Notes: generated from the sequence alone by a model not told the origin. Counted from the stretch's first letter, positions 1 through 16,784 are shown. The stretch: DNA of 16,784 nt from Octopus sinensis (GCF_006345805.1 NW_021825151.1:1-16784), one strand, 5' to 3'. A program made the numbers and translations.

Positions 1-870
1 CTGCCGTCGCTCGAACGCAAACCAGGGATCCCAACAAGTCGAGCGACGACGATTGACCAGGCTCAATCGATCGGCGAAGGTTCGCCACGGAACCCAGAGA
101 GGAGGGAGATAACAACAACAATAACAGCAGGAAGAGATACAGAGAGAGACACACAGAGGCAAGGCAATCGGCTTACATTTAACCCACTAGTTTATAACAC
201 TTTATAATTGTTACAACATCAAATAAATCAAGATACATATCAGGTACATCAAAGGGGAAATACATGCAAGAAACAACACATCAAAGCATTCGGGTACAAT
301 AACAGTTCAGATTGATGCAATATACAGTCCGGAGACAACAGTTGTTTCAAATCACATTAAAACCATATACAGTTCAATGTTCATTTAAAGACTACAACAG
401 AGTCTTTCTCCTCTCTTCAACACATCGATTATTTCTCCTTTTTTTCCCCTTCTTTCTCTTTTTAGTTCAACACATCAATTCAAAGCATAAATAAACACAT
501 ACCGTACAGTTCCTACTATAATAGCTGTGCCTTCCCTCCGCCGTAATCTCCCTCACTTCCTTAATCTTCTCTGCCTGACTTCCTTTGTCACAGCAGAACA
601 ACCATTACTAAACTCGCTGTATCATCCCAACTGTTGCCTGTCTCTCACAAACTCCCAATTGCCAACTGCTTGCCTTGAATCCCAAAATGCTGACTGCTTC
701 TCACAAACTGAACTGCTTATTTAAGGGGGTAGCCTTCAAATGAACCTTAATTCACCCGAAAGGGTCGGGGGCGGTCCCCAGAGCTAATTAATCTACCCGC
801 ATCTGGATGAACAATGGATTCATTCCCAAAAGTAGGTCGCCAGCTCTGTCGTTAAGTTGAACTCACAACA
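1..870. mobile_element. Solo-LTR-like element, copy 1 (left end just outside the window)
   Basis: Ends in ...CACAACA followed by ATAT (871-874). Colinear with 5452-5957 apart from 367 extra bp (143-509). Interrupts a flank that is continuous in type-D introns (cagcatcaaatattactttc). Confidence 0.65.
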
Positions 871-898
871 ATATATTACTTTCAGAAATTATTATCAA

Positions 899-916
899 GA
901 AACTGAACGAACTTAC
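899..916 (-). promoter_or_regulatory. Extended 5' splice-site motif GTAAGTTCGTTCAGTTTC after all 9 type A/C/D exons
   Basis: Plus-strand gaaactgaacgaacttac ending at 916, 3270, 6003, 7857, 11095, 14388 and 15863; one substitution in the copy ending at 10401 and a 1-nt deletion in the copy ending at 15072. Splice-donor role is supported; any role beyond +6 is inference. Confidence 0.6.
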
Positions 917-988
917 ATTGTCGTCAACTTCGAAAGCCCGTTGAATATACCTTGTTTCATGGTTGAAATTTTGTTGCCGTCAAGATTT
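917..988 (-). CDS. LRR exon E12 (type A): NLDGNKISTMKQGIFNGLSKLTT(I/M)
   Basis: Acceptor cttctatAG, donor GTAAGT (911-916), 72 nt, open. Confidence 0.92.
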
Positions 989-3647
989 CTATAGAAGTAA
1001 AGAAAGAGTAAAATAGATTATACGGAAAGTGTTTGTGATAGAACATCAAACAATATGGCTTTAGAATGAAAGGAAGAAAAAGGAAGACATATACCGTAGA
1101 AGAAGAAGAAGAAGAAGAAGAAGAGAAGAAGAAGACGAAATAAGAAGAGGGGGAGGAGAGGAAGGGAGAAGAAAGGGAGGAGGAATAAGAGAAGAAAATG
1201 AAGGAGGAGGAGGACGAAGGGGTGGAAGAGGAGAATGCGGGGAGAAGGAGTAAAGGAGGGTGAAGGAGGAGAGAAGAGAGGAGATGCAGAATAGGCAAGA
1301 GGAGGAGGCGAATGAGAAAAGGAGAAACAAGTAGAAGAGAAAGAAAAAGGAGAAAATTGACGAGATAAAAGTACAGGAGCAAGTTTATAAAAGATGAAGA
1401 AGAAGAAGAAGAAGAAGAAGAAGAAAAAAGAAGGAGAAAAAATGAGGAGGAGGAGGAAGAGAAGAAGAAGAAGAAGAAGAAGAAGAAGAAGAAGGAGACG
1501 AAGGAGAAGAAGACGCATGAGAAATAAGAGGAGGAGGGGGAAGGAAAAAGAAAGGAAGAAGGAAAAGGAGAAGAAAATGAAGGGTGAGGATGGGGAGCAT
1601 TAAGAGGCGGAAGATCAGAATGCGGGGAGAAGGAGATAATGTAGGGTGAAGGAGGGGAGGCGTGGAGGAGAGAGGAGGAGTGAAGAGACGAGGGGCAGAA
1701 TGGGCAGGAGGAGCAGGCGAATGAGAAAAGGAGAAACGTATAGAAGAGAGAGAAAAGAACGAGAAAATTGACGAGATAAAAGAACAGGAGCAAGTTTGAG
1801 AAAGATGAAGAAGAAGAAGAGGAAGAAGAAGAAGGAGAAGAAGGAGGGGAAGAAGAAGAAGAAGAAGAAGAATAAGAATAATAATAAGAAGGAGGAGGAG
1901 GAGGAGGAGAAGTAGATGGAGGAGGAGGAGGAGGAGGAGAAGAAGGAGGAGAAGGAAAAGAAGGAGGAGAAGGAAAAGAAGGAGGAGGTGGAGGAGGAGG
2001 AGGAAAAGAAGAAGGAGAAGAAGAAGCAGAAAAGCAGAAGAAGAAGAAGGAAAATAATAAGAAGAAGAATCAAGAGAAAATTATTTCGGTGGAAGTGTGG
2101 ATAAATAACCACAAGGCACCACAAAATAAAGAGAACAATGTGAAACAAAAAATAGTAGAAAAACATAAGTATTATATTAACACTGCAGACACACTCATAC
2201 ATATATGAACATACACGTTTTCAGGAATAGAATTTTGCTGCAATCAATTATCATTGATAGTCATTGTCATGTTCAGACACAATCAAATAAATATAGCACG
2301 AATATGAAAAGTGATTATGACTTCAAGTAATAGGGAGTGAGAACAAATAGAAATCAGGGAATATTTAAATTAAAGACACATTATATTCCTCATGTATAAA
2401 CGACAACATTGAAAGGACTTACAGATATTGTAAGCTGTGAAGGTCTTGAAACATTTCTTCTTCAATACTCGAAATTTTATTCTCCTGAAGATACCTGAAG
2501 CAGGAAAAAATGTTGCTTATTTTGACGTAGTATGGAATTGCAATAAAAGATGAAATATTGTTCTTTTTGTATAGGAGGAAACCATAGGAAAATAAAATGA
2601 TAAGAAGTAGAAGAAGAAGAAGAAGAAGAAGAAGAAGGAGAAGAAGAAGGAAGAGGAGGAGTAGGACTAGAAGAAGAAGAAGCTGGAAGAGGAGAAGAAG
2701 AAGACGAACGAGGAGTAGAAGAGAAGGTAAAGGAGAAGGAGGAGGGGGATGATGCGAGGTAGAAGAAGAATGAAAAGAAGAAGGGGAAGAAGAATCAGGA
2801 GAAGAAGAAAACTAGATGAACAAGAAGAAGAAGTATTAGACGAAGAAGAAGAAAAAGAGATGAGAGGAGGTAAAGAACAAGAAAAAGAAAGAAGAGAGAA
2901 AGCGAGAAAAATAATATAATAATAAATAAGAAGAAATGACAAGAAAGGTCTTATAAGAAGAAGAAGAAAAACAGATGAGATGATGTAAAGAAGAAAAAAA
3001 AAACTAAAGAAGAAGAAGAAGAAAGAAGAAAAGAAGAAGAAAACAAGAAAGAAAACAGAGAAAAAAGAATAAAAAGAGAGAAAAGAAAAAAGACAATAAA
3101 ACAGAACAACAACAACAGCATCAAGATCAAGTAGAACAAGATTAAGAAGAAGAAGAACATGAACACGAAGAAGATAGTGCACTCTGAAAGTTTATTCGTT
3201 TCTGAGAGAAAATATATCAGCATCAAAGTATACATTCAGATAATAGTATTAAGAAACTGAACGAACTTACAATGTTGTTAAATTCGAAAGCTTCGTGAAG
3301 GTCCCTTCTTTGATGGTTGCAATGTTGTTGTGGCCAAGATCTCTATAACAGTAACGAAAGATTAAAATAGATTATATGGAAAATATTAGTGATACAACAT
3401 CAAACACAGGAGCTTTACAATGAACGAAAGAAAAAGAAATGAGATAACAAAGTAGACGAAGAAGAAGAAGAACAACAACAACAAAAACAACAACGAAAAC
3501 GAAAAGAAGAACAAGAACAAGAAGATGAATGAAAAGAGGAATAAGGAGGTGGAGGAGGGGACGAGAAGGGGAGAAAGTGGAAAAGAAGAAAAAGAAAAAT
3601 AGCAGTGCTAGGGGGACAAACAGAGACACACAATCACACACACATAC

Positions 3648-3686
<39 letters not shown>

Positions 3687-3978
3687 CATATATACGACAG
3701 GCTTCTTTCAGTTTCCGTCTACCAAATCCACTCACAAGGCATTGGTCGGCCCGGGGCTATAGCAGAAGACTTACCACACAGCTACTTACCACACAGCCAC
3801 TCCTGCAGGCGCAGTAGTGGCTGTGTGGTAAGTAGCTTGCTAACCAACCACACGGTTGCGGTTCAGTCCCACTGCGTGGCATCTTGGGCAAGTGTCTTCT
3901 GCTATAGCCCCGGGCCGCGACAATGCCTTGTGAGTGGATTTGGTAGACGGAAACTGAAAGAAGCCTGTCGTATATATG

Positions 3979-4028
<50 letters not shown>

Positions 4029-4887
4029 ATTGTGTGTCTGTGTTTGTCCCCCTAGCACTGCTTGACAACCGATGCTGGTGTGTTTACGTCCCCGTCACTT
4101 AGCGGTTCGGCAAAAAGAGACCGATAGAATAAGTACTAAAAAGGTGGTGCACCAGCATGGCCGCAGTCAAATGACTGAAACAAGTAAAAGAGTAAAGAGA
4201 GAGTAAGGGGAATTTGAGGAAAAAATATATCAGAGGATGAAGAAAATAAGGGCGTAAGTTGATGAAAAAGAAGCAGAAGAATGAAGAATAAAGTGACGTG
4301 AGAGGAAGAGGGGCTAGGAGACGGTAGGGGAGGAGGGAGTGATGTAGGAGAGGGTAGGGTATGAGAGAGGTGGTGCATGAGCAGGAACAGGGGGACAAGT
4401 AGAATAGGAGGAAGATGCTGAAGAGAAGGAAAAAAGAAATGTGATAAGCAGAAATACCTGGAGTAAGTTTATGAAAAATGAGAAGGAGAGGAAGAAGAAG
4501 AAGAAGAAGAGGAAGTTTAAGGAAAAGAAAATGAAGGAGGAGATGAAGGAGGCAGAGGAGGAAGGGGAAGTAGAAGAGGAGAAGAAGAAGACGACGACGA
4601 AGAAGAGAAAGATATGGAAGATGAAGAAAAAGGAGATGTAGATTAGAAGAAGAAGAAGAAGGAGAAGAAGAAGAAAAAAAGAAAGAAGAAGAAAGAGAAG
4701 GAGGTGGATGAGAAGAAGAAGAAGAAGACGAGGAAGAAGACGAAGAAGAAGAAGAAGAAGAAGTAGAAGATGAAGAAGAAGAAGGAAAAAAGAAGAAGAA
4801 GGAGAAAAAGAAGAAGATGAAGAAAAAGAAGAAAAGAAGAACATGAGTAAAAAGCAGAAGAAGAAGAGTAAAAAGCAGAAGAAGGAG

Positions 4888-4925
<38 letters not shown>

Positions 4926-7258
4926 GGAGAAGAAGAAGAACAAGAACAAGAATAATTCGATGTTGAATGACAATATCGAAAGGCGAAGGAGAATATTGAA
5001 ATAAGAAATGAAGGAGGAGACAAATTATAAAATAAAGGAAGTACATAGTCACATTTCACACGAAACTACACTTATATATGAACATACACATATACTTCAG
5101 CTGAAAATATTTGAGGCAAACATGTAAACTCACACACGTAATCATTTTTGATGAAAATTCAAATAAAAATCATTGAAATTTGAGGATGAAAATTGATTTC
5201 GGTTGACCTGAAGTGAAACAAAGCAACTGCAGTAAAGGAACATTAAATTTGTCCTATTATTTCACGTTCTCTCTCAATTTTTCACACATTGTCTCGCTCT
5301 CTTACTCCCACTTTGCATCTTCCAAACTCCTGTTCGGTCCCCAAATTTATATTGATTTTGCTTATTGCAGTCTGAATGTTCATACATTTGTGAGTATATA
5401 TATCAGCATCATATTGTTACGGAATCCCCGAAAGTTGTTACGGAATCCCGCCTGCCGTCGCTCGAACTCGAACCCGGGATCCCAACAAGTCGAGCGACGA
5501 CGATTGACAAGGCTCGATCGATCGGCGATTGTTCGCCACGGAACCCAGAGAGGAGAGAGATAACCACAACAACAACAGCAGCAGGAAGCGATACAGTTCC
5601 TACTACAATAGCTGTGCCTTCCCTCCGCCGTAATCTCCCTCACTTCCTTAATCTTCTCTGCCTGACTTCCTTTGTCACAGAAGAACAACCATTACTAAAC
5701 TCGCTGTATTATCCCAACTGTTGCCTGTTTCTCACAAACTCCCAACTGCCGACTGCTTGCCTTGAATCCCAAATGCTGACTGCCTCTCACAAACGGAACG
5801 GCTTATTTAAGGGGGTAGCCTTCAAATGAACCTTAATTCACCCGAAAGGGTCGGGGGGGTTGCCCCAGAGCTAATTAATCAACCCGCATCTGGAAGAACA
5901 ATGGATTCATTCCCAAAAGTAGGTCGCCAGCTCTGTCCTTAAGATGAACTCACAACAATATATTACTTTCAGAAATTATTATCAAGAAACTGAACGAACT
6001 TACAATGTCGTCAAATTCGAAAGCCCGTTGAATATTCCTTGTTTCATGGTTGAAATATTGTTGCCGTTAAGATCTCTATTGAAGTAAAGAAAGAGTAAAA
6101 TAGATTATACGGAAAATATTTGTGATAAAGCGTCAAACAATATGGCATTAGAATGAAAGGAAGAAAAAGGAAGACATATACCGTACAAGAAGAAGAAGAA
6201 GAAGAAGAAGAAGAAGAAGAAAAATAAGACGAAATAAGAAGAGGGGGAGGGAGGAAGGGAGAAGAAAGGGAGGAGGAATAAGAGAAGAAAATGAAGGAGG
6301 AGGAGGACGAAGGGGTGGAAGAGGAGAATGCGGAGAGAAGGAGTAAAAGGAGGGTGAAGGAAGAGAGAAGAAAGGGATGCAGAATAGGCAGGAGGAGGAG
6401 GCGAATGAGAAAAGGAGTAACAAGTAGAAGAGAAAGAAAAAGAAGGAGAAAATTGACGAGATAAAAGTACAGTAGCAAGTTTATGAAATATGAAGAAGAA
6501 GAAGAAGAAAAAGAAGAAGAGGAAAAGAAGAAGAAGAAGAAAAGAGAAAAGAATGAGAAGGAGGAGGAGGAGAGAAGAAGAAGAAGAAGAAGAAAAAGAA
6601 GAAGAAGAGGAAAAAGTAGAAGAAGAAGAAGAAGAAGGGGAAAAGAATGAGGAAGAGGAGGAGAAGTAGAAGAACAACAACAACAATAACAGGATGCAGG
6701 AGAAATAAGAGGCGGAGGGGGAAGGAAGAAGAAAGGAAGAAGGAAAAGGAGAAGAAAATGAAGGAGGGGGATTAGGAGGATGTAGAGGCGGAAGATCAGA
6801 ATGCGGGGAGAAGGAGAAAATGTAGGATAAGGAGGGGAGGCGTGGAGGAGGGAGAAGGAGTGAAGAGAGAAAGGGCAGAATGGGCAGGAGGAGCAGGCGA
6901 ATGAGAAAAGGAGAAACGTATAGAAAAGAAAGAAAAAGAAGGAGAAAATTGATGAGATAAAAGAACAGGAGCAAGTTTGGGAAAGATGAAGAAGAAGAAG
7001 AAGAAGGAGGAGAAGAAGGAAGAAGAAGAAGAAGAAGGAGGTGGAGGAGGAGGAGAAGTAGATGGAGAGGGGAGGAGGAGGAGAAGTAGAATAATAATAA
7101 TAATAAGAAGAAGAAGAAGTAAGAAGAAGAAGAAGAAAAAGAAAAAGTAGAAGAAGAAGAAAAAGAAGAAGAAGACAAAGAAGAAGAAGAAAAACGAAGA
7201 AGGAGAAAAAGAAGAGGAAAAGAAAAGAAGTGGCAGAAGAAGAAGGAAAAGAAGTAGT

Positions 7259-7289
<31 letters not shown>

Positions 7290-9926
7290 GAAGAAGAAGA
7301 AGAAGAAGAAGAAGAAGAAAAAAAGAAGAAGAAGAAGAAGAAGGAGGAGGGGGAGGAAAAGAAGAAGAAGGAGAAAAAGAAGAAGAAAAAGAAGAAGAAG
7401 AAGAAAATGAAGAAAATGAAAAAGAAGACATTAATAATCATGGTGTTCAAGAAGATGAAATGTAGTCAAAGAAATAACAGGAGATATTTTAGGGAGAGGG
7501 AAGAAACGTTTCAAGGAGAGAACATGGCTGAAAACTCAGGGAATATAAATTTAATACAAATTTAAATACAAATCGTTGAAATTTGGGAATCAAAAATTAG
7601 TTAAAGTGTCAAGAATTGAAACAAAGCAACTGCAATAAAGGAACATTAAATTTGTCCTTTTATTTCACATTCTCTCTCAATTCCTCCCTCTTTCTCTCAT
7701 TGTGTCTTGCTCTCTTAATCACACTTTGTATCTTCCTAAATCATGTTCGGTTCCCGATTTTGTTTAGTGCTGTCTGAGAGTTTATACGGTTAAGAGTGTA
7801 TTTATCAGCATCAAATATTACTTTCAAACAGAGTATCAGGAAACTGAACGAACTTACAATGACTTTAAATTCTTAAGCCCCATGAATACACCATGTTTGA
7901 TGGTTGAAATGTTGTTGGCGCCAAGATACCTGTTGCAATAAAGAACGAGTAAAAATTATTAGATTGAAAATATTTGTGATGCTACATAAAAAATAAGAAG
8001 AAAAAGAAAAAGACAAGTAAAAGAAGACGAAGCAGAAGATGTAACCGAAAAAGAAGACAAAATGGAAAAAACAGAAAAGAAGAAGAAGAAGAAAAGAGGA
8101 AGAGGATGAGGGGGAGAAGGAGGATAAAAAGAAGGGGGAGAGGAGAAGAAAAAAGGTGATGAAGAAGAAAAAGGAGAAGGAAAAGTACAAGAACAAGAAT
8201 AACAAGAATTACAAGAAGAACAAGAAGGAGAAGAAGTACAAGAAGAAGAAAAAGTAGGAGAAGAAAAAGCGGAAGAAGAGGTTGAAGAGGAAAGAAGAAG
8301 AACAAAACCAAGAAGAAGTAAAAGAAGAAGAAAATGAAGAAGAGGAAGAAGGAGAGAAAACAGTAGAGGATAAGAGGGAAGGTGGAAAAGAGGAGGAGGG
8401 GTAAAAGGCAAAATGGCGAGGGCGGGAAGAAGAAGAAAAAGGTGCGTAGATAAGGAGAGGCGAGGTGAGAAGAGAGGATGAGAAGGATGGGCAAGAGGAG
8501 AAGGAGAATGATAATAGGAGAAAGATATAGAAAAGAAAGAAATAAAAGAGAAAATTCACAAGGAGAAAGTGTGGTAGTAAGTTTATGACAGAAGAAGAAG
8601 AAGAAAAAGAAGAAGAAGAAGAAGAAGAATAAGAAGAAGAAGAAAAAGAATAAGAAGAAGAAGAAGAAGAAAAAGAGAAGAAGACTAGGATAAGAAGAAG
8701 AAAAGAAGAAGAAGAAAGGTGTAGAAGAATAAGAGTAATTAGAAAAGAGAACTAGAAGAAGAAGTACAGAAGAAGAACTAAAGAAGAGAAGAAAAGAAGA
8801 AAAAAAGATCAGGGGAAATATTTCGTGAAGTGTGGATAAATAACCACACGGAACCACAGAATAAAGAGAACAATGTGAAACAAAAATAGTAGAAAAACAT
8901 AAGTATTATATTAACACTGCAGACACACTCATACATATATGAACATACACGTTTCCAGGAATAGAATTTTGCTGCAATCAATTATCAACAGATAGTCATT
9001 GTCATGTTCAGACACAATCAAATAAATATAGCACGAATATGGAAAGTGATTATGACTTCCAGTAATAGGGAGTGTTAATAAATAGAATTCAGGGAATATT
9101 TAAATTAAAGACACATTATATTCCTCATGTATAAACGACAACAGAGAAAGGACTTACAGATCTTGTAAGCTGCGAAGGTCTTGAAACACAACTTCCTCAA
9201 TCCTCGAAATTTTATTGTCCTGAAGATACCTGAAGCAGGAAACAATGTTGCTTATTTTGACGTAGTATGGAATTGCAATAAAAGATGAAATATTGTTCTT
9301 TTTGTATTGGAAAAAAACCATAGGAAAATAAAATGACAAGAAGAAGAAGAAGAAGAAGAAGAAGAAGAAGAAAAAGAAAAAGTAAAAGGAAAAGAATAAT
9401 AATAATAATAATAATAAGAAGAAGAAGAAGAAGTAGAAAAATAAGAAGAAGAAGAAGAAGAAGAAGGAAAAGAAAAAGAAGAAGAAGAAAAAGAAGAAAA
9501 AAAGAAGAAGAAGTAGAAGAAGGAAAAGAAGAAGAAGAAGAAAAAGAAAAAGAAAAAGATAAAGAAGAAGAAGAAGAAGATGACGAAGAAGAAGAAAAAG
9601 AAGAAGAAGAAGAGGAAAAAGAAGAAGGAAAAGAAGAAGAAGAAGGAGGTGGATTAGAAGAAGAAGAGAAAAGAAGAAGAAGGAGAAGAAGAACAGGAAG
9701 AAGACAAAGAAGTTTAAGGAAAAGAAAATGAAGGAGGAGATGAAGGAGGCAGAGGAGACGTGGGAGAAAAATAAGAAAAAGACGAAAAAGAGAAAGGTAT
9801 GAAAGATGAAGAAACAGAAGGAGAATGAGAATTAGAGAATAAGTAAGTATTAGTAGTAGTATAGTATAGTGTAGTAGTAGAAGAAGAAAAGAAGAAGAAG
9901 AAGAAGGAGAAGACGAAAAGAAGAAG

Positions 9927-9958
<32 letters not shown>

Positions 9959-10610
9959 AAGAAGAAGAGACATTATAATCATAGTGTTCAAGAAGATGAA
10001 ATAGAAAATGTAGTCAAAGAAATAACCGAGATATTTTAGGGGAGGGAAGAAACGTTGAGGGAGAGAACATGGCTGAAAACTCAGGTATACAAATTTAATA
10101 CACAATTAAATACAATCTTTGAAATTTGGAAAATCCAAAATGAGTTAATGTGTCAAGAATTGACACAAAGCAACTGCAATAAAGGAACATTAAATTTGTT
10201 CTTTTATTTCACATTCTCTCTCAATTCCTCCCTCTTTCTCTCATTGGATCTTGCTCTCTTAATCCTACATTGTATCTTCCTAAATCATGTTTGATTCCCG
10301 AGTTTGTTTAGTGGAGTCTGAAAGTTTATGCGGTTAAGAGTGTATATATCAGCATCAGATATTACTTTCAAACAAAGTATCAGGAAATTGAACGAACTTA
10401 CATTGTCTTTAAATTCTTAAGCCCCATGAATATACCATGTTTGATGGTTGAAATGCTGTTGGCGCCAAGATTCCTGTTGCAGTAAAGAACGAGTAAAAAT
10501 TATTCGATGGAAAATATTTGTGATACTACAAAAAGAAGAAGAAGACGAAGAAGAAGAAGAAAAAGACGAAGAAGAAGAAGAAGAAGAAGAAGAAGAAGAA
10601 GAAGAAGAAG

Positions 10611-10643
<33 letters not shown>

Positions 10644-13018
10644 AAGAAGAAGACATTAATAATCATAGGGTTCAAGAAGATGAAATAGAAAATGTAGTCA
10701 AAGAAATAACAGGAGATATTTTAGGGAGAGGGAAGAAACGTCTCAGGGAGAGAACATGGCTGAAAACTCAGGGAATACAAATTTAATACAAAATTTAATA
10801 CAAATCTTTGAAATTTGGGAATCCAAAATGAGTTAATAATGTGTCCGAATTGAAAGAAACAAAGCAACTGTAATAACGGATCATTAAATTTGTCTTTTAT
10901 TTCATATTCTCTCTCAATTCCTCCCTCTTTCCTCTCATTGTGTCTTGCTCTCTTAAACCCACATTGTGTCTTCCTAAATCATGTTTGGTTCCCGAGTTTG
11001 TCTAGTGCAGTCTGAGAGTTTATACGGTTAAGAGTGTATTTATCAGCATCAAATATTACTTTCAAACAGAGTATCAGGAAACTGAACGAACTTACAATGT
11101 CTTTAAATTCTTAAGCCCCATGAATATACCATGTTTGATGGTTGAAATGTTGTTGGCGCCAAGATACCTGTTGCAGTAAAGAACGAGTAAAAATTATTAG
11201 ATGGAAAATATCTCTGATACTACAAAAAGAAGAAGAAGAGAAGAAGAAGACGAAGAAGAAAAATACGAAGCAGCAGAATTAAACGAAAAGAAGACGAAAA
11301 AAGAAGAAGAAGAAGATGAAGAAGATAAAAAAACATAAAAGAAGAGAAGGAAGAAGCAGAAGAAAAAGAAGAGGAAAAAAGGAGAAAGATGATGAGGGGG
11401 AGAAGGAAGTGAGGAGAATAAAATAAGAAGGTGAGGAAGTAGAAAAAAAAGAAGTACAAGAAGAACAAGAACAAGAAAGAGAAGAAGTACAGGAAGAAGA
11501 AGAAAAAGTTGAAGGAGGAGAAAAAGTAGAAGAAGAGGTAGAAGAGGAAAGAACAGGAAGAACAAGGACATATATGTAGAAGAGGAAGTAGAAGCACAAG
11601 AAGAAGAAGAAGAAGAAGTAAAAGAAGAAGAAGAAGAAGAAGAAGGAGGAGGAGGAGGAAGAGTAGAAGAAGAAGATGGAGATGATGAAGAAGGAGAAGA
11701 AGAAGAGAAAACAGTAGGATGAGGAGAAGGAGGGTGGAGAAAAGGAAAGGATGAGGAGGGGTAAAACGGAGAATGGCGAGGGGGGAAGAAGAAGAAAAAG
11801 GTGTGTGGAGAATGAGAGTCGAGGAGAGAAGAGAGGATGAGAAGAATGGGCAAGAGTAGAAGGAGAATGATAATAGGAGAAGGAATATAGAAGAGAAAGA
11901 AATAAAAGAGAAAATTCACGAGGAGATAGTGCGGTAGTAAGTTTATGAAATAAGAAGAAGAAGAAGAAGAAAAAAAGGAAAAGAAGATGAAAATGCATAA
12001 TAATAATAATAATAATAAAAATAATAATAATATAATATAATAATAATAATGATAATAATAATAATGAAAATGTAGATAGAAGCCACACAACAATGCCTAA
12101 TAATATAAACACCAGGACTTACAAACACATATAACATACAGAAAATTGCACTACTAGGCACTGCACACATCCTACGCAGAACACTTTCCATACAATAACC
12201 ATCAGAGCATCACAACAAATCACAGCAGATACCTAAAACACACAGAGCTGCGCTCGGTAGTGAAGTGAAAGCACGCTATAAAAATAAAACTACTGAATAA
12301 TAATAAGAAGAAGAAGAAGAAAAAGAAAAAGAAGAAGGAGAAAAAGAAATAGAAAAGAAGAAGCAGGAAAAAAAGAAGAAGAAGAATAAAGAAAGAGGAG
12401 AAAGAACTAAAGAAAAGAAGAAGAAGAAGAAGAAGAGAAATAAAAAGATAGAAGAAGAAGAAGTAGAACGAAAAAGAAGAAGAGGGAGAAGGAGAGTACA
12501 AAGCAAAGAACTCTAGAAGAAGAAGCAGAAGAACAAGAAGAAGAAGAAGTAGAAGCAAAAGAAGAAGAAGAAGGAGAAGGAGATGAAGAAGAAGAAGGAG
12601 AAGAAGAAAAAGAAGAACTAGAAGAAGAAGCGGAAGAAGAAGAACAAGAAGAAGAAGAAGAGGAAGTAGAAGAAACGAAGAATATGTAGAAGAAGAAGAA
12701 GAAGAAGAGAAAACAGTAGGATGAGGAGAGGGAGGGTGGAGAAAAGGAGAGGATAGAGGAGAGGTAAAAGGGAGAATGGCGAGTGGGGAAGAAGAAGAAA
12801 AAGGTTTGTGGAGTGTGAGAGTCGAGGAGAGAAGAGAGGATGAGAAGAATGGGCAAGAGGCGACGGGGAATTATAATAGGAGAAAGATATAGAAAAGAAA
12901 GAAATAAAAGAGAAAATTCACGAGGAGAAAGTGCGGTAGTAAGTTTATGAAAGAAGATGTAGAAGAATAAGGAAGAAGAAGAAGAAGAAGAATGGCAAAA
13001 GGAAAGAAGATAAAATGC

Positions 13019-13054
<36 letters not shown>

Positions 13055-15407
13055 TATATTAATAATAATAATAATATACTAATAAAATAATGAGAAGAAG
13101 AAAGAAGAAGAAGAAGAAGAAGAAAAGAAAAGAAGATGGTTAGAAAAAGAAAGAGAAATAAGAAGAGAAAAGGAAAAGAATAAGAAGAGAAAAGAAAAAA
13201 GAAGAAGAAGAAGAAGAAAAGGAAAGAAGAGTAAGAAAAAAGAAGAACTAAAATAAGAAGATTAAAGTAGAATACGAAGAAAAAAGTAAGAAGAATGAAG
13301 AAGAAAAAGAATAACTAGAAGAATATAGAGAAGAGTAAGAACTAGAAAGAGAAGGAAGAAGAACGAAGAAGAAGAAAGAAGATCAGGGGAATTATTTCGT
13401 GGGGAAGTGTGGATAATAACCACACGGCCCACAGAATAAAGAAGAACAATGTTAAACAAACAACAGTAAAAAAACATAAGTATTTTATTAACACTGCATA
13501 CACACTCATACAGATATGAAACATACACGTTTTCAGGAATGAATTTTTTGATGCAGACGATTATCACTGCCATTCAATTTCTGTCAGACACCATCAAATA
13601 AATGGATGCACAAGATGAAAGTGGGATTAGTGTGTAATGTTCAATAATTTCAGACACAATCAAATAAATATAGCACGAATATGGAAAGTGATTATGACTT
13701 CAAGTAATAGGGAGAATAAATAGATATCAGGGAATATTAAAACTAAGACCATTATATTCCTCATGTATAAACGACAACATTGAAAGGACTTACAGATATT
13801 GTAAGCTGTGAAGGTCTTGAAACATAACTTTCTCAATCCTCGAAATTTTATTGTTCTGAAGATATCTGAAGGAAGAAACAATGTTGCTTATTTTGACGTA
13901 GTATGGAATTGCAATAAAAGATGAAATATTGTTCTTTTTGTATAGGAAGAAAACCATAGGAAAATAAAATGACAAGAAGATAAAGAAGGAGAAGAAGAAG
14001 AAGAAGAAGAAGAAGAAAGAATGAAAGAAGAAGTATTAGAAGAAGAAGAAGAAAAAGAGATGAAAGAAGGCAAAGAAGAAGAAAAAGTTAGAAGTAGAAA
14101 CGAAGAAGAGAAGAAAAAGAAGAAGAAGAAAACAAGGAGAAGAAGAAGAAAAAAAGGAGAAGAAGAAGAAAGCAAGGAGAAGAAGAAAGAAGGAGAAAAA
14201 GAAGAACAAGAAGAAGAACAACAACAATAGCAACAGCATCAAGATCAAGTAGAACAAGATTAAGAAGAAGAAGAACATGAACAAGAAGAAGATAGTGAAC
14301 TCTGAAAGTTTATTCGTTTCTAAGAGAAAATATATCAGCATCAAAATATACATTCAGATAATAGTATTAAGAAACTGAACGAACTTACAATGTTGTTAAA
14401 TTCGAAAGCTTCGTGAAGGTCCCTTCTTTGATTGTTGCAATGTTGTTACTTTGCAGATCTCTATAGCAGTAACGAAAGATTAAAATAGATTATATGGAAA
14501 ATATTAGTGATACAACATCAAACACAGGAGCTTTACAATGAACGAAAGAAAAAGAAAAGAGATAACGAAGAAGAAGAAGAAGAAGAGGAAGAAAAACAAC
14601 AACAACAACAAAAACGAAAAGAAGAACAAGAAGAAGAAGAAGAATGAAAAGTGGAATAAGGAGGTGGAGGAGGGCAGGAGAAGTGGAGAAAGGGGAAAAG
14701 AAGGAAAAAAAGAATAATGGATAGTGGAGGAAAAGAAATCAGAAGATGAAAAAAATAAGGGAGTAAGTTGATGAAATAGAAGAAGAAGAAAACAAGGAGA
14801 AGAAGAAGAAAACAAGGAGAAGAAGAAGAAAGCAAGGAGAAGAAGAAGAAGGAGAAAAAGATGAACAAGAAGAAGAAGAACAACAATAGCAACAGCATCA
14901 AGATCAAGTAGAACATTGGATCTTGCTCTCTTAATCCCACATTGTATCTTCCTAAATCATGTTCGGTTACCGAGTTTGTTTAGTGCTGTCTGAGAGTTTA
15001 TACGGTTAAGAGTGTATTTATCAGCATCAAATATTACTTTCAAACAGAGTATCAGGAACTGAACGAACTTACAATGACTTTAAATTCTTAAGCCCCATGA
15101 ATATACCATGTTTGATGGTTGAAATGTTGTTGGCGCCAAGATACCTATTGCAGTAAAGAACGAGTAAAAATTATTAGATGGAAAATATTTGTGATACTAC
15201 AAAAGAAGAAGAAGAAGAAGAAGAAGAAGAAGAAGAGAAGAAGAAAAAGAAGAACAAGAAGTACAAGAAGAACAAGAACAAGAAGTAGGAGAAGGAGAAG
15301 GGGAAATAGAAGAACAAGAAGAAGAAGAAGTAAAAGTAGAAGAAGAAGAAGGAGGAGGAAGAGGAGGAAGAGAAGAAGGAGAAGAAGAAGAGAAGAAGAA
15401 GAGAAGA

Positions 15408-15445
<38 letters not shown>

Positions 15446-15935
15446 AAGAAGAAGAAGAAGTAGAAGAAGAAAAAGAAGAAGAAGAAAAAGAAGAAGACAC
15501 ATTAAAAATCATGGTGTTCAAGAAGATGAAATAGATAATGTAGTCAAAGAAATAACAGGAGATATTTTAGGGAGACGGAAGAAACGTTTGAAAACTCAGG
15601 GAATACAAATTTAATGCAAATTTAAATTTGGGAATCCAAATGAGTTAATGTGTCAAGAATTAAAACAAAGCAAATTCTCTCTCAATGCCTCCCTCTCTCT
15701 CTCATTGTGTCTTGCTCACTTAATCCCCCTTTGTATCTTCTCATATTTATGTTTGATTCCCGAGTTTGTTTAGTGCAGTCTGAAAGTTTATACGGTTAAG
15801 AGGGTATATATCAGCATCAAATATTACTTTCAAACAGTGTATCAGGAAACTGAACGAACTTACAATGTCTTTAAATTCTTAAACCCCATGAATATACCAT
15901 GTTTGATGGTTGAAATGTTGTTGGCGCCAAGATTC
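917..15935 (-). CDS. Internal part of a multi-exon LRR protein gene: 12 x 72-nt exons giving about 288 aa of tandem typical LRRs (LGR/relaxin-receptor/GRL101- or Slit-like exon architecture); extends beyond the window on both sides
   Basis: Twelve AG..GT-bounded 72-nt segments, all stop-free in phase 2 and all matching LxxLxLxxNxIxxIxxxxFxxL. One 72-nt phase-2 exon per LRR is the established organisation of LGR4-6/RXFP and Slit genes; the family assignment is inference. Confidence 0.88.
989..1805. repeat. Type-A acceptor-side block (acceptor flank plus two purine-rich modules), duplicated at about 6076-6990
   Basis: Colinear blocks: ggaagaaaaaggaagacatataccgta, gaaaattgacgagataaaagtacag, taagaggcggaagatcagaatgcggggagaagg. 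Confidence 0.85.
2066..2422. repeat. Type-B donor-side intron flank (about 350 bp); other copies at 8807-9157 and 13381-13793
   Basis: Shared blocks such as ataagtattatattaacactgcagacacactcataca and cattatattcctcatgtataaacgacaaca. Confidence 0.9.
2423..2494 (-). CDS. LRR exon E11 (type B): YLQENKISSIEEEMFQDLHSLQY(L)
   Basis: Acceptor cctgcttcAG, donor GTAAGT (2417-2422), 72 nt, open. Confidence 0.92.
3107..3270. repeat. Type-C donor-side intron flank; copy at about 14219-14388 and an orphan fragment at about 14785-14915
   Basis: cagcatcaagatcaagtagaaca...; 4 mismatches over about 150 bp between the two full copies. Confidence 0.9.
3271..3342 (-). CDS. LRR exon E10 (type C): DLGHNNIATIKEGTFTKLSNLTT(L)
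   Basis: Acceptor ctgttatAG, donor GTAAGT (3265-3270), 72 nt, open. Confidence 0.92.
3601..3806 (-). mobile_element. Inverted partial copy of the same SINE, head-to-head, lacking the B-box segment and the 3' end
   Basis: 3601-3770 is the near-perfect reverse complement of 3894-4062; 3780-3801 is the reverse complement of 3816-3837. Confidence 0.85.
3808..4200 (+). mobile_element. tRNA-derived SINE of the octopod type (near full length, with internal (TA)n/(TG)n)
   Basis: A-box-like TGGCTGTGTGG (3818-3828), B-box-like GGTTCAGTCCC (3860-3870), CORE-like ttgggcaagt, 3' tail gactgaaacaagtaaaagagtaaaga. Absent from the paralogous C intron (about 14700-14760). Family recognised from memory, not by search. 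Confidence 0.8.
4888..4923 (+). repeat. (AAC)12 microsatellite
   Basis: Read directly. Confidence 0.95.
5415..5957. mobile_element. Solo-LTR-like element, copy 2, internally deleted; TGTT...AACA termini, 4-bp TSD ATAT
   Basis: ATAT at 5411-5414 and 5958-5961. TG...CA ends with a 4-bp TSD are typical of Ty3/gypsy LTRs (established); no internal gag/pol is present. Confidence 0.72.
6004..6075 (-). CDS. LRR exon E9 (type A): DLNGNNISTMKQGIFNGLSNLTT(L)
   Basis: Acceptor cttcaatAG, donor GTAAGT (5998-6003), 72 nt, open. Confidence 0.92.
7424..7857. repeat. Type-D donor-side intron flank (about 430 bp); other copies at 9969-10401, 10652-11095, 14914-15072 (truncated), 15496-15863; diverged homolog in the type-A flank about 5150-5414
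   Basis: Direct visual alignment, e.g. aaagcaactgcaataaaggaacattaaatttgt and tcagcatcaaatattactttcaaaca. Confidence 0.9.
7858..7929 (-). CDS. LRR exon E8 (type D, Y-start): YLGANNISTIKHGVFMGLKNLKS(L)
   Basis: Acceptor ttgcaacAG, donor GTAAGT (7852-7857), 72 nt, open. Confidence 0.92.
8340..8590. repeat. Purine-rich intronic module (about 250 bp); close copies at about 11700-11950 and 12700-12950; more distant relatives at 1105-1395, 1520-1805, 4200-4475, 6190-6490, 6700-6990, 14640-14775, 16080-16410
   Basis: Shared gaaaacagtag...atgggcaagag...gagaaaattcac(g/a)aggaga...gtagtaagtttatga. Confidence 0.75.
9158..9229 (-). CDS. LRR exon E7 (type B): YLQDNKISRIEEVVFQDLRSLQD(L)
   Basis: Acceptor cctgcttcAG, donor GTAAGT (9152-9157), 72 nt; peptide visible in supplied ORF 9154..9339. 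Confidence 0.92.
10402..10473 (-). CDS. LRR exon E6 (type D, N-start): NLGANSISTIKHGIFMGLKNLKT(M/I)
   Basis: Acceptor ctgcaacAG, donor GTAAGT (10396-10401), 72 nt, open; ends in AT, so the junction codon is ATG or ATA. Confidence 0.9.
11096..11167 (-). CDS. LRR exon E5 (type D, Y-start): YLGANNISTIKHGIFMGLKNLKT(L)
   Basis: Acceptor ctgcaacAG, donor GTAAGT (11090-11095), 72 nt, open. Confidence 0.92.
11998..12065 (+). repeat. Imperfect (TAA)n microsatellite; paralogous tract at about 13018-13090
   Basis: Both tracts follow gaagat(g)aaaatgca. Confidence 0.9.
12066..12303 (+). mobile_element. 5'-truncated 3' end of an RLE-type non-LTR retrotransposon (R4/Dong-like) inserted in a (TAA)n tract
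   Basis: 12109-12198 reads TPGLTNTYNIQKIALLGTAHILRRTLSIQ*, resembling the C-terminal QKxxLLGTAxILR motif of R4-group elements. It is followed by a 3' UTR and a TAA tail, with (TAA)n on both sides. Confidence 0.75.
13794..13865 (-). CDS. LRR exon E4 (type B): YLQNNKISRIEKVMFQDLHSLQY(L)
   Basis: Acceptor ttccttcAG, donor GTAAGT (13788-13793), 72 nt; peptide visible at the end of supplied ORF 13790..13975. Confidence 0.92.
14389..14460 (-). CDS. LRR exon E3 (type C): DLQSNNIATIKEGTFTKLSNLTT(L)
   Basis: Acceptor ctgctatAG, donor GTAAGT (14383-14388), 72 nt, open. Confidence 0.92.
15073..15144 (-). CDS. LRR exon E2 (type D, Y-start): YLGANNISTIKHGIFMGLKNLKS(L)
   Basis: Acceptor ctgcaatAG, donor GTAAGT (15067-15072), 72 nt, open. 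Confidence 0.92.
15411..15445 (+). repeat. (AGT)n microsatellite, about 11 units
   Basis: Read directly. Confidence 0.95.
15864..15935 (-). CDS. LRR exon E1 (type D, N-start): NLGANNISTIKHGIFMGFKNLKT(L)
   Basis: Acceptor cttcaacAG (ct at 15936-15937), donor GTAAGT (acttac 15858-15863), 72 nt, open; framework Leu replaced by Phe (TTT). Confidence 0.9.
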
Positions 15936-16784
15936 CTGTTGAAGTAAAGAACGAGTAAAAAAAGATTAGATGGAAAATATTTGTGATACTACATGAAACA
16001 CTGTGGCTTCAGAATGAAAGGAAGAAAAATAAAGACAGATAACAATGATGAAGGAGAAGAAAAAGAAGAAGTAGGATGAAAAGGTGGAGAAGAGGAAGGA
16101 GGGAGAAGAAGGAGAAAAAGAAGCGATCAAGAAGCGGAAGTGGAAGAGATGGGAGAAAAGTGACGAAGTAGAAAGTAAGGGATTAAATTGTTGAAACAGT
16201 AGGTTGTGAAAAGAGTCGAGGATAGCTGAGTCGAGATGAGAAGAGTTGAGGTCAAGATAATTGAGGGATGGAGAGTGAAGAAGGATGCAGGAAGGCAAGA
16301 GTAGGAGGAGCAGGAGGGGGAGGAGTAGATGAATGAGATAGAAAGGAAAAAGTAGAAGACAGAAAGAGAAGAAAAGTTCGAAGCAGAAAGTACGGGAGCA
16401 AGTTTATGAAAAAAGCGATGTAGGAGAAGAAGTAAAAAAAAAAGAAGAAGAAGAAGAAGAAGAAGAAAGAGATGACGAAAATGAAGAAGAAGAAGAAGAT
16501 AAACAAGAAGAAAAATAAGAAGAAAAAGAAGAAGGTGGAGGAGCCGGAGTAGGAGCAGCGGGGAGAGCTGGAGGAGGAGAAGAAGAAGATGAAGAAAAAG
16601 AAGTAAAAGAAGAAGAAGAAGAATATGTAGAAGAAGAAGAAGAAGAAGAAGAAGGAGAAGAAGAAGAAGGAGGATGAGGAGGAGGAGAAGGAGGAGGACG
16701 AGGAGAAGAAGAAAAGAAGAAGAAAAAGCAGAAGAAGAAAAGCAGAAGAAGAAGAAGAAGAAGAAGAAGAAGAAAGAGAATAAG

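What the first reader, a model, noticed from the sequence alone, without database searches (positions are those of the whole stretch)
917..15935. Array of freely interchangeable single-LRR exon cassettes: candidate combinatorial receptor-diversity locus (Dscam/VLR-like logic) in a probable cephalopod
Seen: 12 exons, each 72 nt and phase 2-2, of four types in the order D D C B D D B D A C B A. Every exon begins with A or G and ends in TT, CT or AT. Any exon joined to any other therefore keeps frame, never creates a stop, and always makes a hydrophobic junction codon (TTR/CTR = Leu, ATA/ATG = Ile/Met). All 24 splice sites are intact. Established: one-LRR-per-72-nt-exon genes exist (LGR/RXFP, Slit); Dscam diversifies by alternative exon choice; lamprey VLRs assemble LRR cassettes. 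Inference: recent, shuffled expansion of near-identical cassettes could give many ectodomains by exon skipping or copy-number variation. The plain alternative is one long, constitutively spliced LRR domain.
Basis: partly seen in the sequence, partly recalled or inferred. Interest (0 to 1): 0.88.

Follow-up and report, generated by a model that had tools for sequence, protein, structure and literature searches.

The report
Octopus leucine-rich-repeat exon array
This is part of an Octopus vulgaris cell-surface receptor-family gene in which twelve tandemly duplicated 72-base exons each encode one leucine-rich repeat; existing gene models use only some of them, so variable exon use is plausible but unproven, and the design has precedents in Slit, hormone-receptor and brown-alga genes.

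Summary
On the minus strand there are exactly 12 exons of 72 nt. Each has an AG acceptor, a GTAAGT donor and phase 2-2, in the order D D C B D D B D A C B A. All 144 ordered joins stay in frame and give Leu, Ile or Met.

The window is most likely Octopus vulgaris. Exons e1-e3 match CAI9744517.1 exactly, and e1-e3 plus e11-e12 match CAI9744518.1. These are two transcripts of one gene in the octopus-specific LRR / adhesion-GPCR-like expansion.

The array grew by tandem duplication of exon-plus-intron units. All 12 exons look maintained: none has an indel, against about 19 expected from the flanks, and D exons are better conserved than their introns. Yet e4-e10 appear in no retrieved protein.

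RefSeq models of O. sinensis paralogs show up to 13 isoforms that differ by whole 24-aa repeats. Variable cassette use is therefore plausible. It rests on annotation only, and repeated exons invite mapping, RT template-switching and copy-number artefacts.

The "interchangeability" follows automatically from phase-2 LRR exons (LGR, Slit, brown-alga ROCO). Dscam-like mutual exclusion is not met, and VLR-like assembly is only partly testable here and nothing points to it. Every intron carries a sense-strand (CUU)n tract, which is unexplained.

Verdict: new member of a known kind, moderate interest.

The parts
15864..15935 (-). e1, type D LRR exon (NLGANNISTIKHGIFMGFKNLKT), 72 nt, phase 2-2
   Evidence: AG/GTAAGT sites and open frame. 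100% identical to CAI9744517.1 and CAI9744518.1.
15073..15144 (-). e2, type D LRR exon (YLGANNISTIKHGIFMGLKNLKS)
   Evidence: Present in both annotated products.
14389..14460 (-). e3, type C LRR exon (DLQSNNIATIKEGTFTKLSNLTT). It is the last window exon used before the jump in both annotated transcripts.
13794..13865 (-). e4, type B LRR exon (YLQNNKISRIEKVMFQDLHSLQY). Intact, but in no retrieved protein.
11096..11167 (-). e5, type D LRR exon. It differs from e2 by 1 nt and is not in any retrieved protein.
   Evidence: Conserved beyond its flanks, P = 4e-4.
10402..10473 (-). e6, type D LRR exon (NLGANSISTIKHGIFMGLKNLKT). It ends in AT, giving a Met or Ile junction.
9158..9229 (-). e7, type B LRR exon (YLQDNKISRIEEVVFQDLRSLQD)
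7858..7929 (-). e8, type D LRR exon (YLGANNISTIKHGVFMGLKNLKS)
   Evidence: Conserved beyond its flanks, P = 2e-4.
6004..6075 (-). e9, type A LRR exon (DLNGNNISTMKQGIFNGLSNLTT)
   Evidence: It differs from e12 at 6 of 72 nt, where the flanks predict 2.2.
3271..3342 (-). e10, type C LRR exon (DLGHNNIATIKEGTFTKLSNLTT). The 5' part is D-like (mosaic). The last 45 nt are identical to e3.
2423..2494 (-). e11, type B LRR exon (YLQENKISSIEEEMFQDLHSLQY). Used in CAI9744518.1, joined directly to e3.
917..988 (-). e12, type A LRR exon (NLDGNKISTMKQGIFNGLSKLTT). Used in CAI9744518.1.
989..15863 (-). The 11 introns between the exons (523-2661 nt). Each holds a conserved exon-proximal segment and a sense-strand degenerate (CTT)n pyrimidine tract that ends 56-116 nt before the next acceptor.
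   Evidence: Duplicated units are 73-97% identical. The + strand of individual introns is 62-82% purine (73% over the whole window), with (AAG)n arrays across the introns. TCTT occurs at 69 per kb on the sense strand against 3 per kb on the antisense strand.
1..916 (-). Start of the intron downstream of e12. The next exons (C' DLQSNNIATIKEGTFTGISILTT, A' DLDGNKISTMKQGIFNGLSNLTT, the last LRR and the LRRCT) lie beyond the window.
   Evidence: Order inferred from CAI9744518.1. No cap exon in the window.
15936..16784 (-). End of the intron upstream of e1. Six more LRR exons, the LRRNT and the signal peptide lie beyond the window.
   Evidence: LRR layout of CAI9744517.1.

Best explanation
The window is an internal stretch of the ectodomain-coding region of one Octopus vulgaris gene, with products CAI9744517.1 and CAI9744518.1. 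The gene belongs to the octopus-lineage expansion of proteins with this layout: signal peptide, LRRNT, n x 24-aa LRR, LRRCT, a Cys-rich module and a hormone-receptor-like module. Several paralogs continue into GPS and a secretin-type 7TM, making them adhesion GPCRs.

Each 72-nt exon encodes one turn of the LRR solenoid. The phase-2 intron splits the codon of the conserved first Leu.

The array grew by repeated unequal tandem duplication of exon-plus-intron units, with some exon mosaicism (e10). Scaffold residues are invariant. Differences between copies fall largely on the x positions of LxLxxNxI, the concave face.

Shown:
- The anatomy of the array.
- The gene identity.
- Maintenance of all 12 exons.

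Inferred:
- Because all units are symmetric and carry equally strong splice sites, subsets of exons are skipped as cassettes. This would give ectodomains with different numbers and compositions of LRRs.
- The annotated transcripts are two such subsets. The unannotated e4-e10 would be included in other mRNAs.
- The skipping is most likely unprogrammed or tissue-modulated cassette skipping. It is not a one-of-N choice and not somatic assembly.
- The sense-strand (CUU)n tract in every intron may act as a PTB-type repressor platform that tunes inclusion.
For: Anatomy.

LRR identity.

Gene identity: exact matches of e1-e3 and e11-e12. The two products have consecutive accessions, CAI9744517.1 and CAI9744518.1, on one 21.16-Mb contig.

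Family:
- Paralogs P0242 and P0243 have LRR + GPS + 7tm_2, and P0243 also has a Death domain.

Duplication units.

Maintenance of all exons:
- Zero indels in the exons, against 0.033 gap openings per nt in the flanks. About 19 would be expected over 8 pairs (P about 5e-9).
- D exons, including the unannotated e5, e6 and e8, are more conserved than their flanks (P from 2e-4 to 0.05).
- A frame-broken 70-nt exon in the O. sinensis paralog L001 shows that unused exons do decay in this family.

Variable use:
- The two O. vulgaris transcripts differ by three LRR exons, and both omit e4-e10.
- The O. vulgaris annotation added alternative forms through PASA from Iso-Seq and RNA-seq.
- The O. sinensis RefSeq gene on L002 has isoforms X1-X13 of 409, 385, 361 and 337 aa. 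Eight of them are in-order skips of whole genomic exons.
- A second gene has X3-X9 of 525, 501 and 477 aa.
- The model on L001 skips two intact exons.

Pyrimidine tracts are specific to the LRR-array introns in three loci.
Against: - No read-level data could be examined. All isoform evidence is annotation.
- Both O. vulgaris jumps start at the C-type exon e3 and land on what follows another C-type exon (e10 then e11; C' then A'). The last 45 nt of e3 and e10 are identical. The e3-e11 junction could therefore come from multi-mapped reads, RT template switching between tandem repeats in the mRNA, or an allele shortened by unequal crossing-over.
- Five of the 13 RefSeq isoforms on L002 contain half-exon hybrids, linked to a 73-nt frame-broken exon. 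Part of that diversity is therefore artefact.
- Skipped and included exons have indistinguishable splice sites. e5 differs from e2 by 1 nt. This fits constitutive inclusion with incomplete annotation equally well.
- No protein from transcript assemblies contains e4-e10.
- The annotated products of this gene have no GPS or 7TM.
Confidence: 0.5

Rival explanations
1. Constitutive long LRR domain. All 12 exons, plus at least 9 outside the window, are always spliced together into one solenoid of 20 or more repeats. The shorter annotated transcripts and the RefSeq isoforms would then be artefacts of assembling and mapping reads over near-identical exons.
For: All exons are intact and under length and sequence constraint. 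Donors are identical GTAAGT and acceptors are equivalent in included and omitted exons. Both jumps join homologous exon contexts. Hybrid half-exon isoforms exist in RefSeq.
Against: Neither of the two transcript-informed O. vulgaris models, and none of 373 retrieved proteins, contains e4-e10. The e3-to-A' junction of CAI9744517.1 cannot be explained by shared 3' ends, because C' ends differently from e3. Eight RefSeq isoforms on L002 are clean in-order skips whose junction sequences are distinguishable at the amino-acid level.
Confidence: 0.3
2. Copy-number or structural polymorphism. The sequenced reference haplotype carries e4-e10, but the animals that supplied the transcript data carry shorter alleles produced by unequal crossing-over between C-type units. 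Their mRNAs then align as apparent skips.
For: The array clearly evolves by unequal duplication. The jumps coincide with homologous C-type units. The transcript data came from other projects and animals. Paralogs differ widely in LRR number.
Against: Units are 3-25% diverged, so the duplications are old rather than recent private events. Two different 'deletions' would be needed. There are no population data.
Confidence: 0.1
3. Programmed combinatorial diversity system in the sense of Dscam or VLR. This would mean cell-specific, regulated choice or somatic assembly of LRR cassettes that gives each cell a distinct receptor for immune or neuronal self-recognition.
For: Many interchangeable cassettes. 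Many annotated isoforms in paralogs. Nonsynonymous-biased differences: all six variable sites among the D exons are nonsynonymous, counting the TT/AT end of the exon that changes the junction codon, and pN/pS is about 1.1 in A and B. Ten of 18 within-type variable residues lie on concave-face x positions (own count). The family is expressed in nerve cord, suckers and skin, with reported positive selection.
Against: There is no mutual exclusivity, since e1 and e2 are used together. There are no docking or selector inverted repeats. All cassettes have ordinary splice sites in one orientation, so nothing suggests DNA-level assembly. There are no single-cell or protein data. The sample of substitutions is small.
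Confidence: 0.08
4. Assembly artefact: the array, or e4-e10, is a false duplication of collapsed or haplotypic sequence.
For: The region is highly repetitive, with microsatellite-rich introns.
Against: No two units are near-identical. The best flank identity is about 97% and most are 75-92%, with many indels. Every exon copy has its own diagnostic differences. Paralogous arrays in independent O. sinensis contigs have the same architecture.
Confidence: 0.02

Closest known systems
Octopus-specific adhesion-GPCR expansion ('group 3' of Ritschard et al. 2019, PMC6408891). NCBI labels its members 'adhesion G-protein coupled receptor G6-like', 'GPR126-like' or 'slit homolog-like'.
   Same: The products of the window's gene share the signal peptide, LRRNT, LRR types, LRRCT and Cys-rich region with paralogs that carry GPS and 7tm_2. 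P0243 has LRR, GPS, 7tm_2 and a Death domain, which fits the paper's description of group 3.
   Different: The two annotated products of this gene stop before any GPS or 7TM. The paper does not describe the one-LRR-per-exon arrays or LRR-exon isoforms (no occurrences of 'splic' or 'LRR').
Brown-alga LRR-ROCO genes (Zambounis 2012; Teng 2024, PMC11378527)
   Same: Each LRR sits in its own 72-bp phase-2 exon. Exon types are in shuffled order. There is diversifying change at x positions, and multiple splice variants carry different LRR combinations. The same 'repertoire' hypothesis has been proposed.
   Different: Those are cytoplasmic ROC-COR GTPases in a different eukaryotic kingdom, with a different LRR class and a proposed immune role. 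There is no homology beyond the repeat.
Slit and LGR / glycoprotein-hormone-receptor genes
   Same: One LRR per exon of about 72 nt, with all introns in phase 2 and modularity that permits exon skipping (LGR5 delta-exon-5 variant listed).
   Different: Their exon arrays are ancient, orthologous and fixed in number. They are not recent shuffled near-identical copies, and they lack (CUU)n-rich introns as far as I know (own knowledge).
NLRP3 and other NLR LRR-exon alternative splicing (Hoss 2019, PMC6642158)
   Same: Strict exonic modularity of the LRRs allows in-frame loss of a repeat unit, which changes function stochastically.
   Different: Those are RI-type LRR exons in a cytosolic sensor, with a single well-defined skipped exon.
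Drosophila Dscam1 mutually exclusive splicing
   Same: Tandem arrays of homologous exons that could multiply ectodomain variants.
   Different: Dscam picks exactly one exon per cluster through docking and selector RNA pairing, and its exons encode Ig half-domains. Here several same-type exons are used together, and no such pairing elements were found.
Lamprey and hagfish variable lymphocyte receptors
   Same: Diversity is carried by variable LRR modules on a conserved solenoid, with variable residues on the concave face.
   Different: VLRs are assembled somatically at the DNA level from flanking cassettes that lack splice sites. Here every cassette is an ordinary spliced exon inside the gene.

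Membership tests
Leucine-rich repeat domain (24-residue extracellular type) | Tandem repeats matching LxxLxLxxNxIxxIxxxxFxxLxx | tested here: met
   Pfam LRR_8 at E = 2.7e-122. Positions L3, N6, I8, F16 and L22 are invariant in all 12 units; L1, I11 and L19 show only conservative changes (M, M, F).
One-LRR-per-exon, phase-2 gene architecture (LGR, Slit, ROCO type) | Each repeat lies in a separate exon of about 72 nt, and all introns share the same phase | tested here: met
   12 of 12 exons are 72 nt with phase 2-2 and canonical sites. The O. sinensis paralog loci L001 and L002 show the same.
Octopus LRR / adhesion-GPCR-like expansion (Ritschard group 3) | Sequence membership: the shared signal peptide, LRRNT, LRR types, LRRCT and Cys-rich ectodomain | tested here: met
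   e1-e3 and e11-e12 are identical to CAI9744517.1 and CAI9744518.1. Those proteins are 58-82% identical to family members in O. vulgaris and O. sinensis.
Adhesion GPCR (class B2) | GAIN/GPS autoproteolysis motif followed by a secretin-type 7TM | tested here: inconclusive
   Not in the window. The gene's annotated 916-aa product has only LRRs and a sub-threshold HRM match (20.2 bits against a cut-off of 26.2). Paralogs P0242 and P0243 have GPS + 7tm_2. The downstream genomic sequence could not be fetched.
Dscam-type mutually exclusive exon cluster | Exactly one exon of a cluster is included per mRNA | tested here: not met
   Both annotated products contain e1 and e2 (both type D) in tandem. 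RefSeq paralog isoforms contain 0 to 2 of the variable exons.
Dscam-type mutually exclusive exon cluster | Docking-site and selector complementary intronic sequences | tested here: not met
   A minus-strand self-comparison at E < 1e-10 finds only one intronic palindrome, at 3601-4062. Short elements of less than about 30 nt were not searched exhaustively.
VLR-type somatic LRR assembly | An incomplete germline gene flanked by cassettes that lack splice signals and are copied in at the DNA level | tested here: not met
   All 12 cassettes are co-oriented inside the gene, each with AG and GTAAGT. Somatic DNA could not be examined.
LRR exon shuffling plus alternative splicing repertoire (brown-alga ROCO model) | Shuffled order of exon types, with mosaic exons | tested here: met
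   Order D D C B D D B D A C B A. e10 has a D-like 5' part. Units are duplicated in different combinations.
LRR exon shuffling plus alternative splicing repertoire (brown-alga ROCO model) | Several transcripts with different LRR-exon combinations | tested here: inconclusive
   Met at annotation level: 2 products for this gene and up to 13 for a paralog. No reads were examined, and some isoforms are hybrid-exon artefacts.
Functional (maintained) coding exons versus decaying pseudo-exons | Frame, length and splice sites preserved beyond the neutral expectation | tested here: met
   0 indels against about 19 expected. D exons are conserved beyond their flanks. Contrast: a 70-nt broken exon in L001 and a 73-nt exon in L002.

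The most novel reading that the evidence does not exclude
Octopuses may use stochastic or cell-type-specific skipping within tandem arrays of single-LRR exons to give individual neurons or sucker sensory cells different LRR ectodomains. This would operate across a lineage-specific family of LRR / adhesion-GPCR-like genes and might be tuned by the (CUU)n tracts in every array intron. It would be a third, independently evolved route to combinatorial cell-surface diversity, beside insect Dscam1 and clustered protocadherins.
Probability: 0.12. Interest if true: 0.85.

Novelty: new member of a known kind. Interest (0 to 1): 0.5.

Why it matters
Cephalopods lack a Dscam1-type splicing system. Their large nervous system has been linked to expanded protocadherins and lineage-specific GPCRs.

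If the LRR arrays of this octopus-specific receptor family really yield many ectodomain variants, they would add a splicing-based layer of surface diversity. That diversity would arise in tissues of special interest (axial nerve cord, suckers, skin). It would also be a tractable animal counterpart to the brown-alga ROCO hypothesis.

There is a practical side too. These loci are under-annotated: 7 of the 12 intact exons here are in no protein model. Some of their RefSeq isoforms are artefacts. Expression or evolutionary studies of this family therefore need long-read, repeat-aware re-annotation.

Tried and rejected
**Missed first search.** The first homology search with the 287-aa concatenate missed the true gene. 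The tool appears to list only proteins up to about 1.75 times the query length. A 1060-aa chimeric query was needed to find CAI9744518.1.

**Flanking DNA.** I tried to fetch the O. vulgaris DNA around the window through P0124, P0240, P0001 and P0121. None is on record. The caps, GPS and 7TM exons and the C' and A' exons could therefore not be examined at DNA level.

**Transcript-assembly proteins.** I looked for Logan proteins containing e4-e10. There are none; all Logan hits are at most about 40% identical and not octopus.

**Other negative searches.**
- Rfam and tRNA scans of the window: nothing.
- Six-frame ORFs: only low-complexity translations of the microsatellites, no transposon ORF.
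- Extra or relic LRR exons and cap exons in the window: none.
- Selector or docking-type inverted repeats: only one intronic palindrome.

**Misassembly or haplotypic duplication.** Rejected, because all units are diverged.

**Orthology of L001.** L001 is a paralog or related array, not the ortholog. DNA identity is 77-92% and the exon order differs.

**Isoform labels.** 'Isoform X2' in the O. vulgaris names is a similarity-transferred label from Blast2GO, not evidence of isoforms. RefSeq X-numbers for O. sinensis are real isoform labels, even though the base names differ.

**Literature.** I found no description of LRR-exon splicing in cephalopods.

**Not done.** I did not run structure prediction. 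The LRR assignment is already unambiguous.
Full report
**1. Observation**

In + coordinates they are:

| Exon | Coordinates | Type |
|---|---|---|
| e1 | 15864-15935 | D |
| e2 | 15073-15144 | D |
| e3 | 14389-14460 | C |
| e4 | 13794-13865 | B |
| e5 | 11096-11167 | D |
| e6 | 10402-10473 | D |
| e7 | 9158-9229 | B |
| e8 | 7858-7929 | D |
| e9 | 6004-6075 | A |
| e10 | 3271-3342 | C |
| e11 | 2423-2494 | B |
| e12 | 917-988 | A |

The gene runs on the minus strand. Every exon follows a pyrimidine tract plus AG and is followed by GTAAGT.

In phase 2-2 each exon reads as 23 codons plus a split codon, with no stop. Pairwise identities confirm four types in the order D D C B D D B D A C B A. A, C and D are related to each other, and B is distinct.

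First bases are A or G, and last bases are TT, CT or AT. All 144 ordered joins give Leu, Met or Ile.

A nucleotide profile of the exons and tblastn with the four unit peptides and both cap peptides find no further copy, relic or cap exon in the window. The concatenate is 287 aa of pure LRR (Pfam LRR_8, E = 2.7e-122).

**2. Identity of the gene**

The concatenate first hit only Octopus sinensis and O. vulgaris LRR proteins at 56-67% identity. The search tool appears to list only proteins up to about 1.75 times the query length.

A second search with the best hit showed a large octopus family. Members are labelled 'adhesion G-protein coupled receptor G6-like', 'slit homolog-like' and similar names. 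Among them, P0124 contains e1, e2 and e3 verbatim. P0124 is CAI9744517.1, O. vulgaris, 844 aa, on a 21.16-Mb contig.

A third search used P0124 with all 12 exons inserted. It found P0240, which is CAI9744518.1 (916 aa, the next accession on the same contig). P0240 is identical to P0124 except that after e3 it continues with e11, e12 and a further C-type exon. It then rejoins P0124 at an A-type exon, the last LRR and the LRRCT.

An exact-string check confirms the pattern:
- e1-e3 are in both proteins.
- e11-e12 are in P0240 only.
- e4-e10 are in none of the 373 proteins retrieved.

The window is therefore most likely O. vulgaris, or a very close relative.

The protein layout is:
- signal peptide and LRRNT
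- six LRRs upstream of the window
- the window exons
- three more LRRs
- LRRCT
- a Cys-rich module ending in CCxxxLCN
- a sub-threshold hormone-receptor domain match

Paralogs with the same ectodomain continue into GPS and 7tm_2, and one also carries a Death domain. That domain set fits the octopus-specific adhesion-GPCR 'group 3' of Ritschard et al. 2019. [quoted passage not shown]

The two annotated products of this gene end before any GPS or 7TM. Whether the gene is itself a GPCR is therefore open.

**3. How the array arose and whether all exons are alive**

Self-comparison shows duplicated exon-plus-intron units at 73-97% identity, in various combinations. This is tandem segmental duplication, not assembly duplication.

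Exon e10 is a mosaic. Its first codons (CTT GGC .. ACC) match type D and the rest matches type C.

I compared each exon with the 200 nt on either side, for eight same-type pairs:
- The flanks show 3-16% mismatches and 0.033 gap openings per nt.
- No exon has any indel. About 19 would be expected (P about 5e-9; the pairs are not independent).
- D exons, including the unannotated e5, e6 and e8, have 1-3 differences where 7.5-11 are expected (P from 2e-4 to 0.05).
- The A pair differs more than its flanks do (6 against 2.2, P = 0.02).

Differences are mostly nonsynonymous:
- In D, all six variable sites are nonsynonymous, counting the TT/AT end of the exon that changes the junction codon from Leu to Met.
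- pN/pS is about 1.1 in A and B.
- The numbers are small.

By my count, ten of 18 within-type variable residues lie on the x positions of LxLxxNxI, the concave face.

In the O. sinensis paralog L001 one A-type exon has decayed to 70 nt. In L002 one exon is 73 nt. Unused or damaged exons therefore do occur in this family.

I conclude that all 12 window exons are maintained as coding exons. This implies that e4-e10 reach mRNA at least sometimes.

**4. Is exon use variable?**

*Evidence for.*
- The O. vulgaris annotation added alternative forms with PASA from Iso-Seq and RNA-seq. It gives two transcripts for this gene that differ by three LRR exons, and both lack e4-e10.
- RefSeq for O. sinensis lists isoforms X1-X13 for the gene on contig VCDQ01004985.1 (L002). 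Their lengths are 409, 385, 361 and 337 aa, in steps of 24 aa.
- A second gene has X3-X9 of 525, 501 and 477 aa. Two more genes have equal-length isoforms that differ in which LRR unit is present.
- I mapped the units on L002. The genomic order is c*, a, b, e, d, f, g, h, i, j, plus two unused intact exons.
- Isoforms X1, X3, X5, X6, X9, X10, X11 and X12 are clean in-order cassette skips, mostly among the first five exons.
- The model on L001 also skips two intact exons.

*Evidence for caution.*
- Five L002 isoforms contain half of c* fused to the second half of another exon. c* is frame-broken by an A8 run. Part of the RefSeq diversity is therefore artefactual.
- In the window, both jumps start at the C-type e3 and land where another C-type exon would lead (e10 then e11; C' then A'). 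The last 45 nt of e3 and e10 are identical.
- Multi-mapped junction reads, RT template switching within an mRNA made of 72-nt tandem repeats, or a shorter allele in the animals that supplied the transcripts could each mimic skipping.
- Included and omitted exons have equivalent splice sites, so nothing local predicts skipping.
- No read-level data were available here.

**5. The claimed 'design' features**

The frame-neutral, stop-free, hydrophobic junction follows directly from a phase-2 intron that splits the codon of the first conserved Leu of each repeat. The same holds for gonadotropin-receptor LRR exons and for the 72-bp phase-2 LRR exons of brown-alga ROCO genes. For the ROCO genes, shuffling plus alternative splicing has already been proposed as a repertoire mechanism. 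Slit and NLR genes are cited for the same exonic modularity.

Dscam-type mutual exclusion is contradicted, because e1 and e2 are used together and there are no selector-type inverted repeats. VLR-type assembly does not fit cassettes that are ordinary spliced exons.

I found no paper describing this exon architecture or LRR-exon splicing in cephalopods.

**6. An unexplained feature**

Every one of the 11 introns has a sense-strand degenerate (CTT)n tract. CT-only runs total 125-893 nt per intron. Each tract ends 56-116 nt before the next acceptor. TCTT occurs at 69 per kb on the sense strand against 3 per kb on the antisense strand.

In the O. sinensis loci the same bias is confined to the LRR-array introns. 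Those are 73-74% pyrimidine, with 28-34% of bases in CT runs. The rest of the same genes is 46-53% pyrimidine, with about 1% in CT runs.

The tracts may simply have been co-amplified with the unit. Alternatively, since UCUU-rich tracts are the classic PTB binding context (own knowledge), they may be a platform for repressing or tuning exon inclusion. That is inference only.

**7. Verdict**

This is a modular single-LRR exon array in an octopus-specific LRR / adhesion-GPCR-like gene. It was built by tandem exon duplication, and all its exons are maintained. Annotation-level evidence shows transcripts carrying different exon subsets, in this gene and in its paralogs.

Cassette skipping that yields variable LRR ectodomains is the explanation I favour (about 0.5). 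Constitutive inclusion with incomplete annotation is the main rival (about 0.3). A programmed Dscam- or VLR-like diversity system is not indicated (about 0.1).

The thing is a new member of a known kind, the modular LRR-exon genes. It is of moderate interest, and long-read RNA data that already exist publicly could settle the main question.

Noticed in passing
window 989-15863 (all introns); L001 1-10000; L002 12900-32000: The introns of the LRR arrays are strongly strand-asymmetric. They carry long degenerate (CTT)n tracts on the sense strand, and TCTT occurs at 69 per kb on the sense strand against 3 per kb on the antisense strand. The other introns of the same O. sinensis genes lack this. 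It could be a PTB-type regulatory platform or simply co-amplified microsatellite.
   Followed up: partly
window 3601-4062: An imperfect palindrome (83% over 477 nt) lies in the e9-e10 intron. It consists of two inverted copies of a SINE-like element flanked by (TA)n/(CA)n. From memory only, its sequence resembles a tRNA-derived octopus SINE, but ARAGORN and Rfam found no tRNA.
   Followed up: partly
window 1-916 versus 5452-6003: The introns downstream of the two A-type exons share an unidentified repeat (1-142 matches 5452-5596 at 90%; 505-2069 matches 5592-7265 at 85%). A block of about 360 nt, at 143-504, is present only in the first copy, so it is an insertion or a deletion.
   Followed up: no
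window 3271-3342 (e10): The exon is a mosaic. Codons 2-3 and 9 match type D and the rest matches type C. This suggests gene conversion or recombination between exon types.
   Followed up: partly
L002 11131-11203: This O. sinensis LRR exon is 73 nt because of an A8 run, which is either a frameshift or a homopolymer assembly error. RefSeq isoforms X2, X4, X7, X8 and X13 of this gene carry half of it fused to the second half of another exon, which looks like an annotation artefact.
   Followed up: yes
L002 28668-28739 and 31667-31738: Two intact 72-nt LRR exons with good splice sites lie after the last LRR exon used. None of the 13 RefSeq isoforms includes them.
   Followed up: partly
L001 6370-6439, 3160-3231, 3745-3816: The O. 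sinensis paralog has a decayed 70-nt A-type exon. Its Gnomon model (XP LOC115230659) also skips two intact exons, one D-type and one B-type.
   Followed up: yes
proteins P0124, P0240, P0106, P0126, P0131 (C-termini): Several family members in two species end with the same '...DESSSTGNGTEDRAAETNF' tail, just where paralogs continue into GAIN and 7TM. This may be a conserved alternative terminal exon that gives secreted ectodomains.
   Followed up: no
proteins P0001, P0003, P0012, P0065, P0122 (N-termini): Genes on different contigs share a near-identical exon for the signal peptide and LRRNT (MFHHVVSYRRSLVLILCTILFLETQADSDICKICTCNSL...). This will cause cross-mapping of reads between paralogs.
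   Followed up: no
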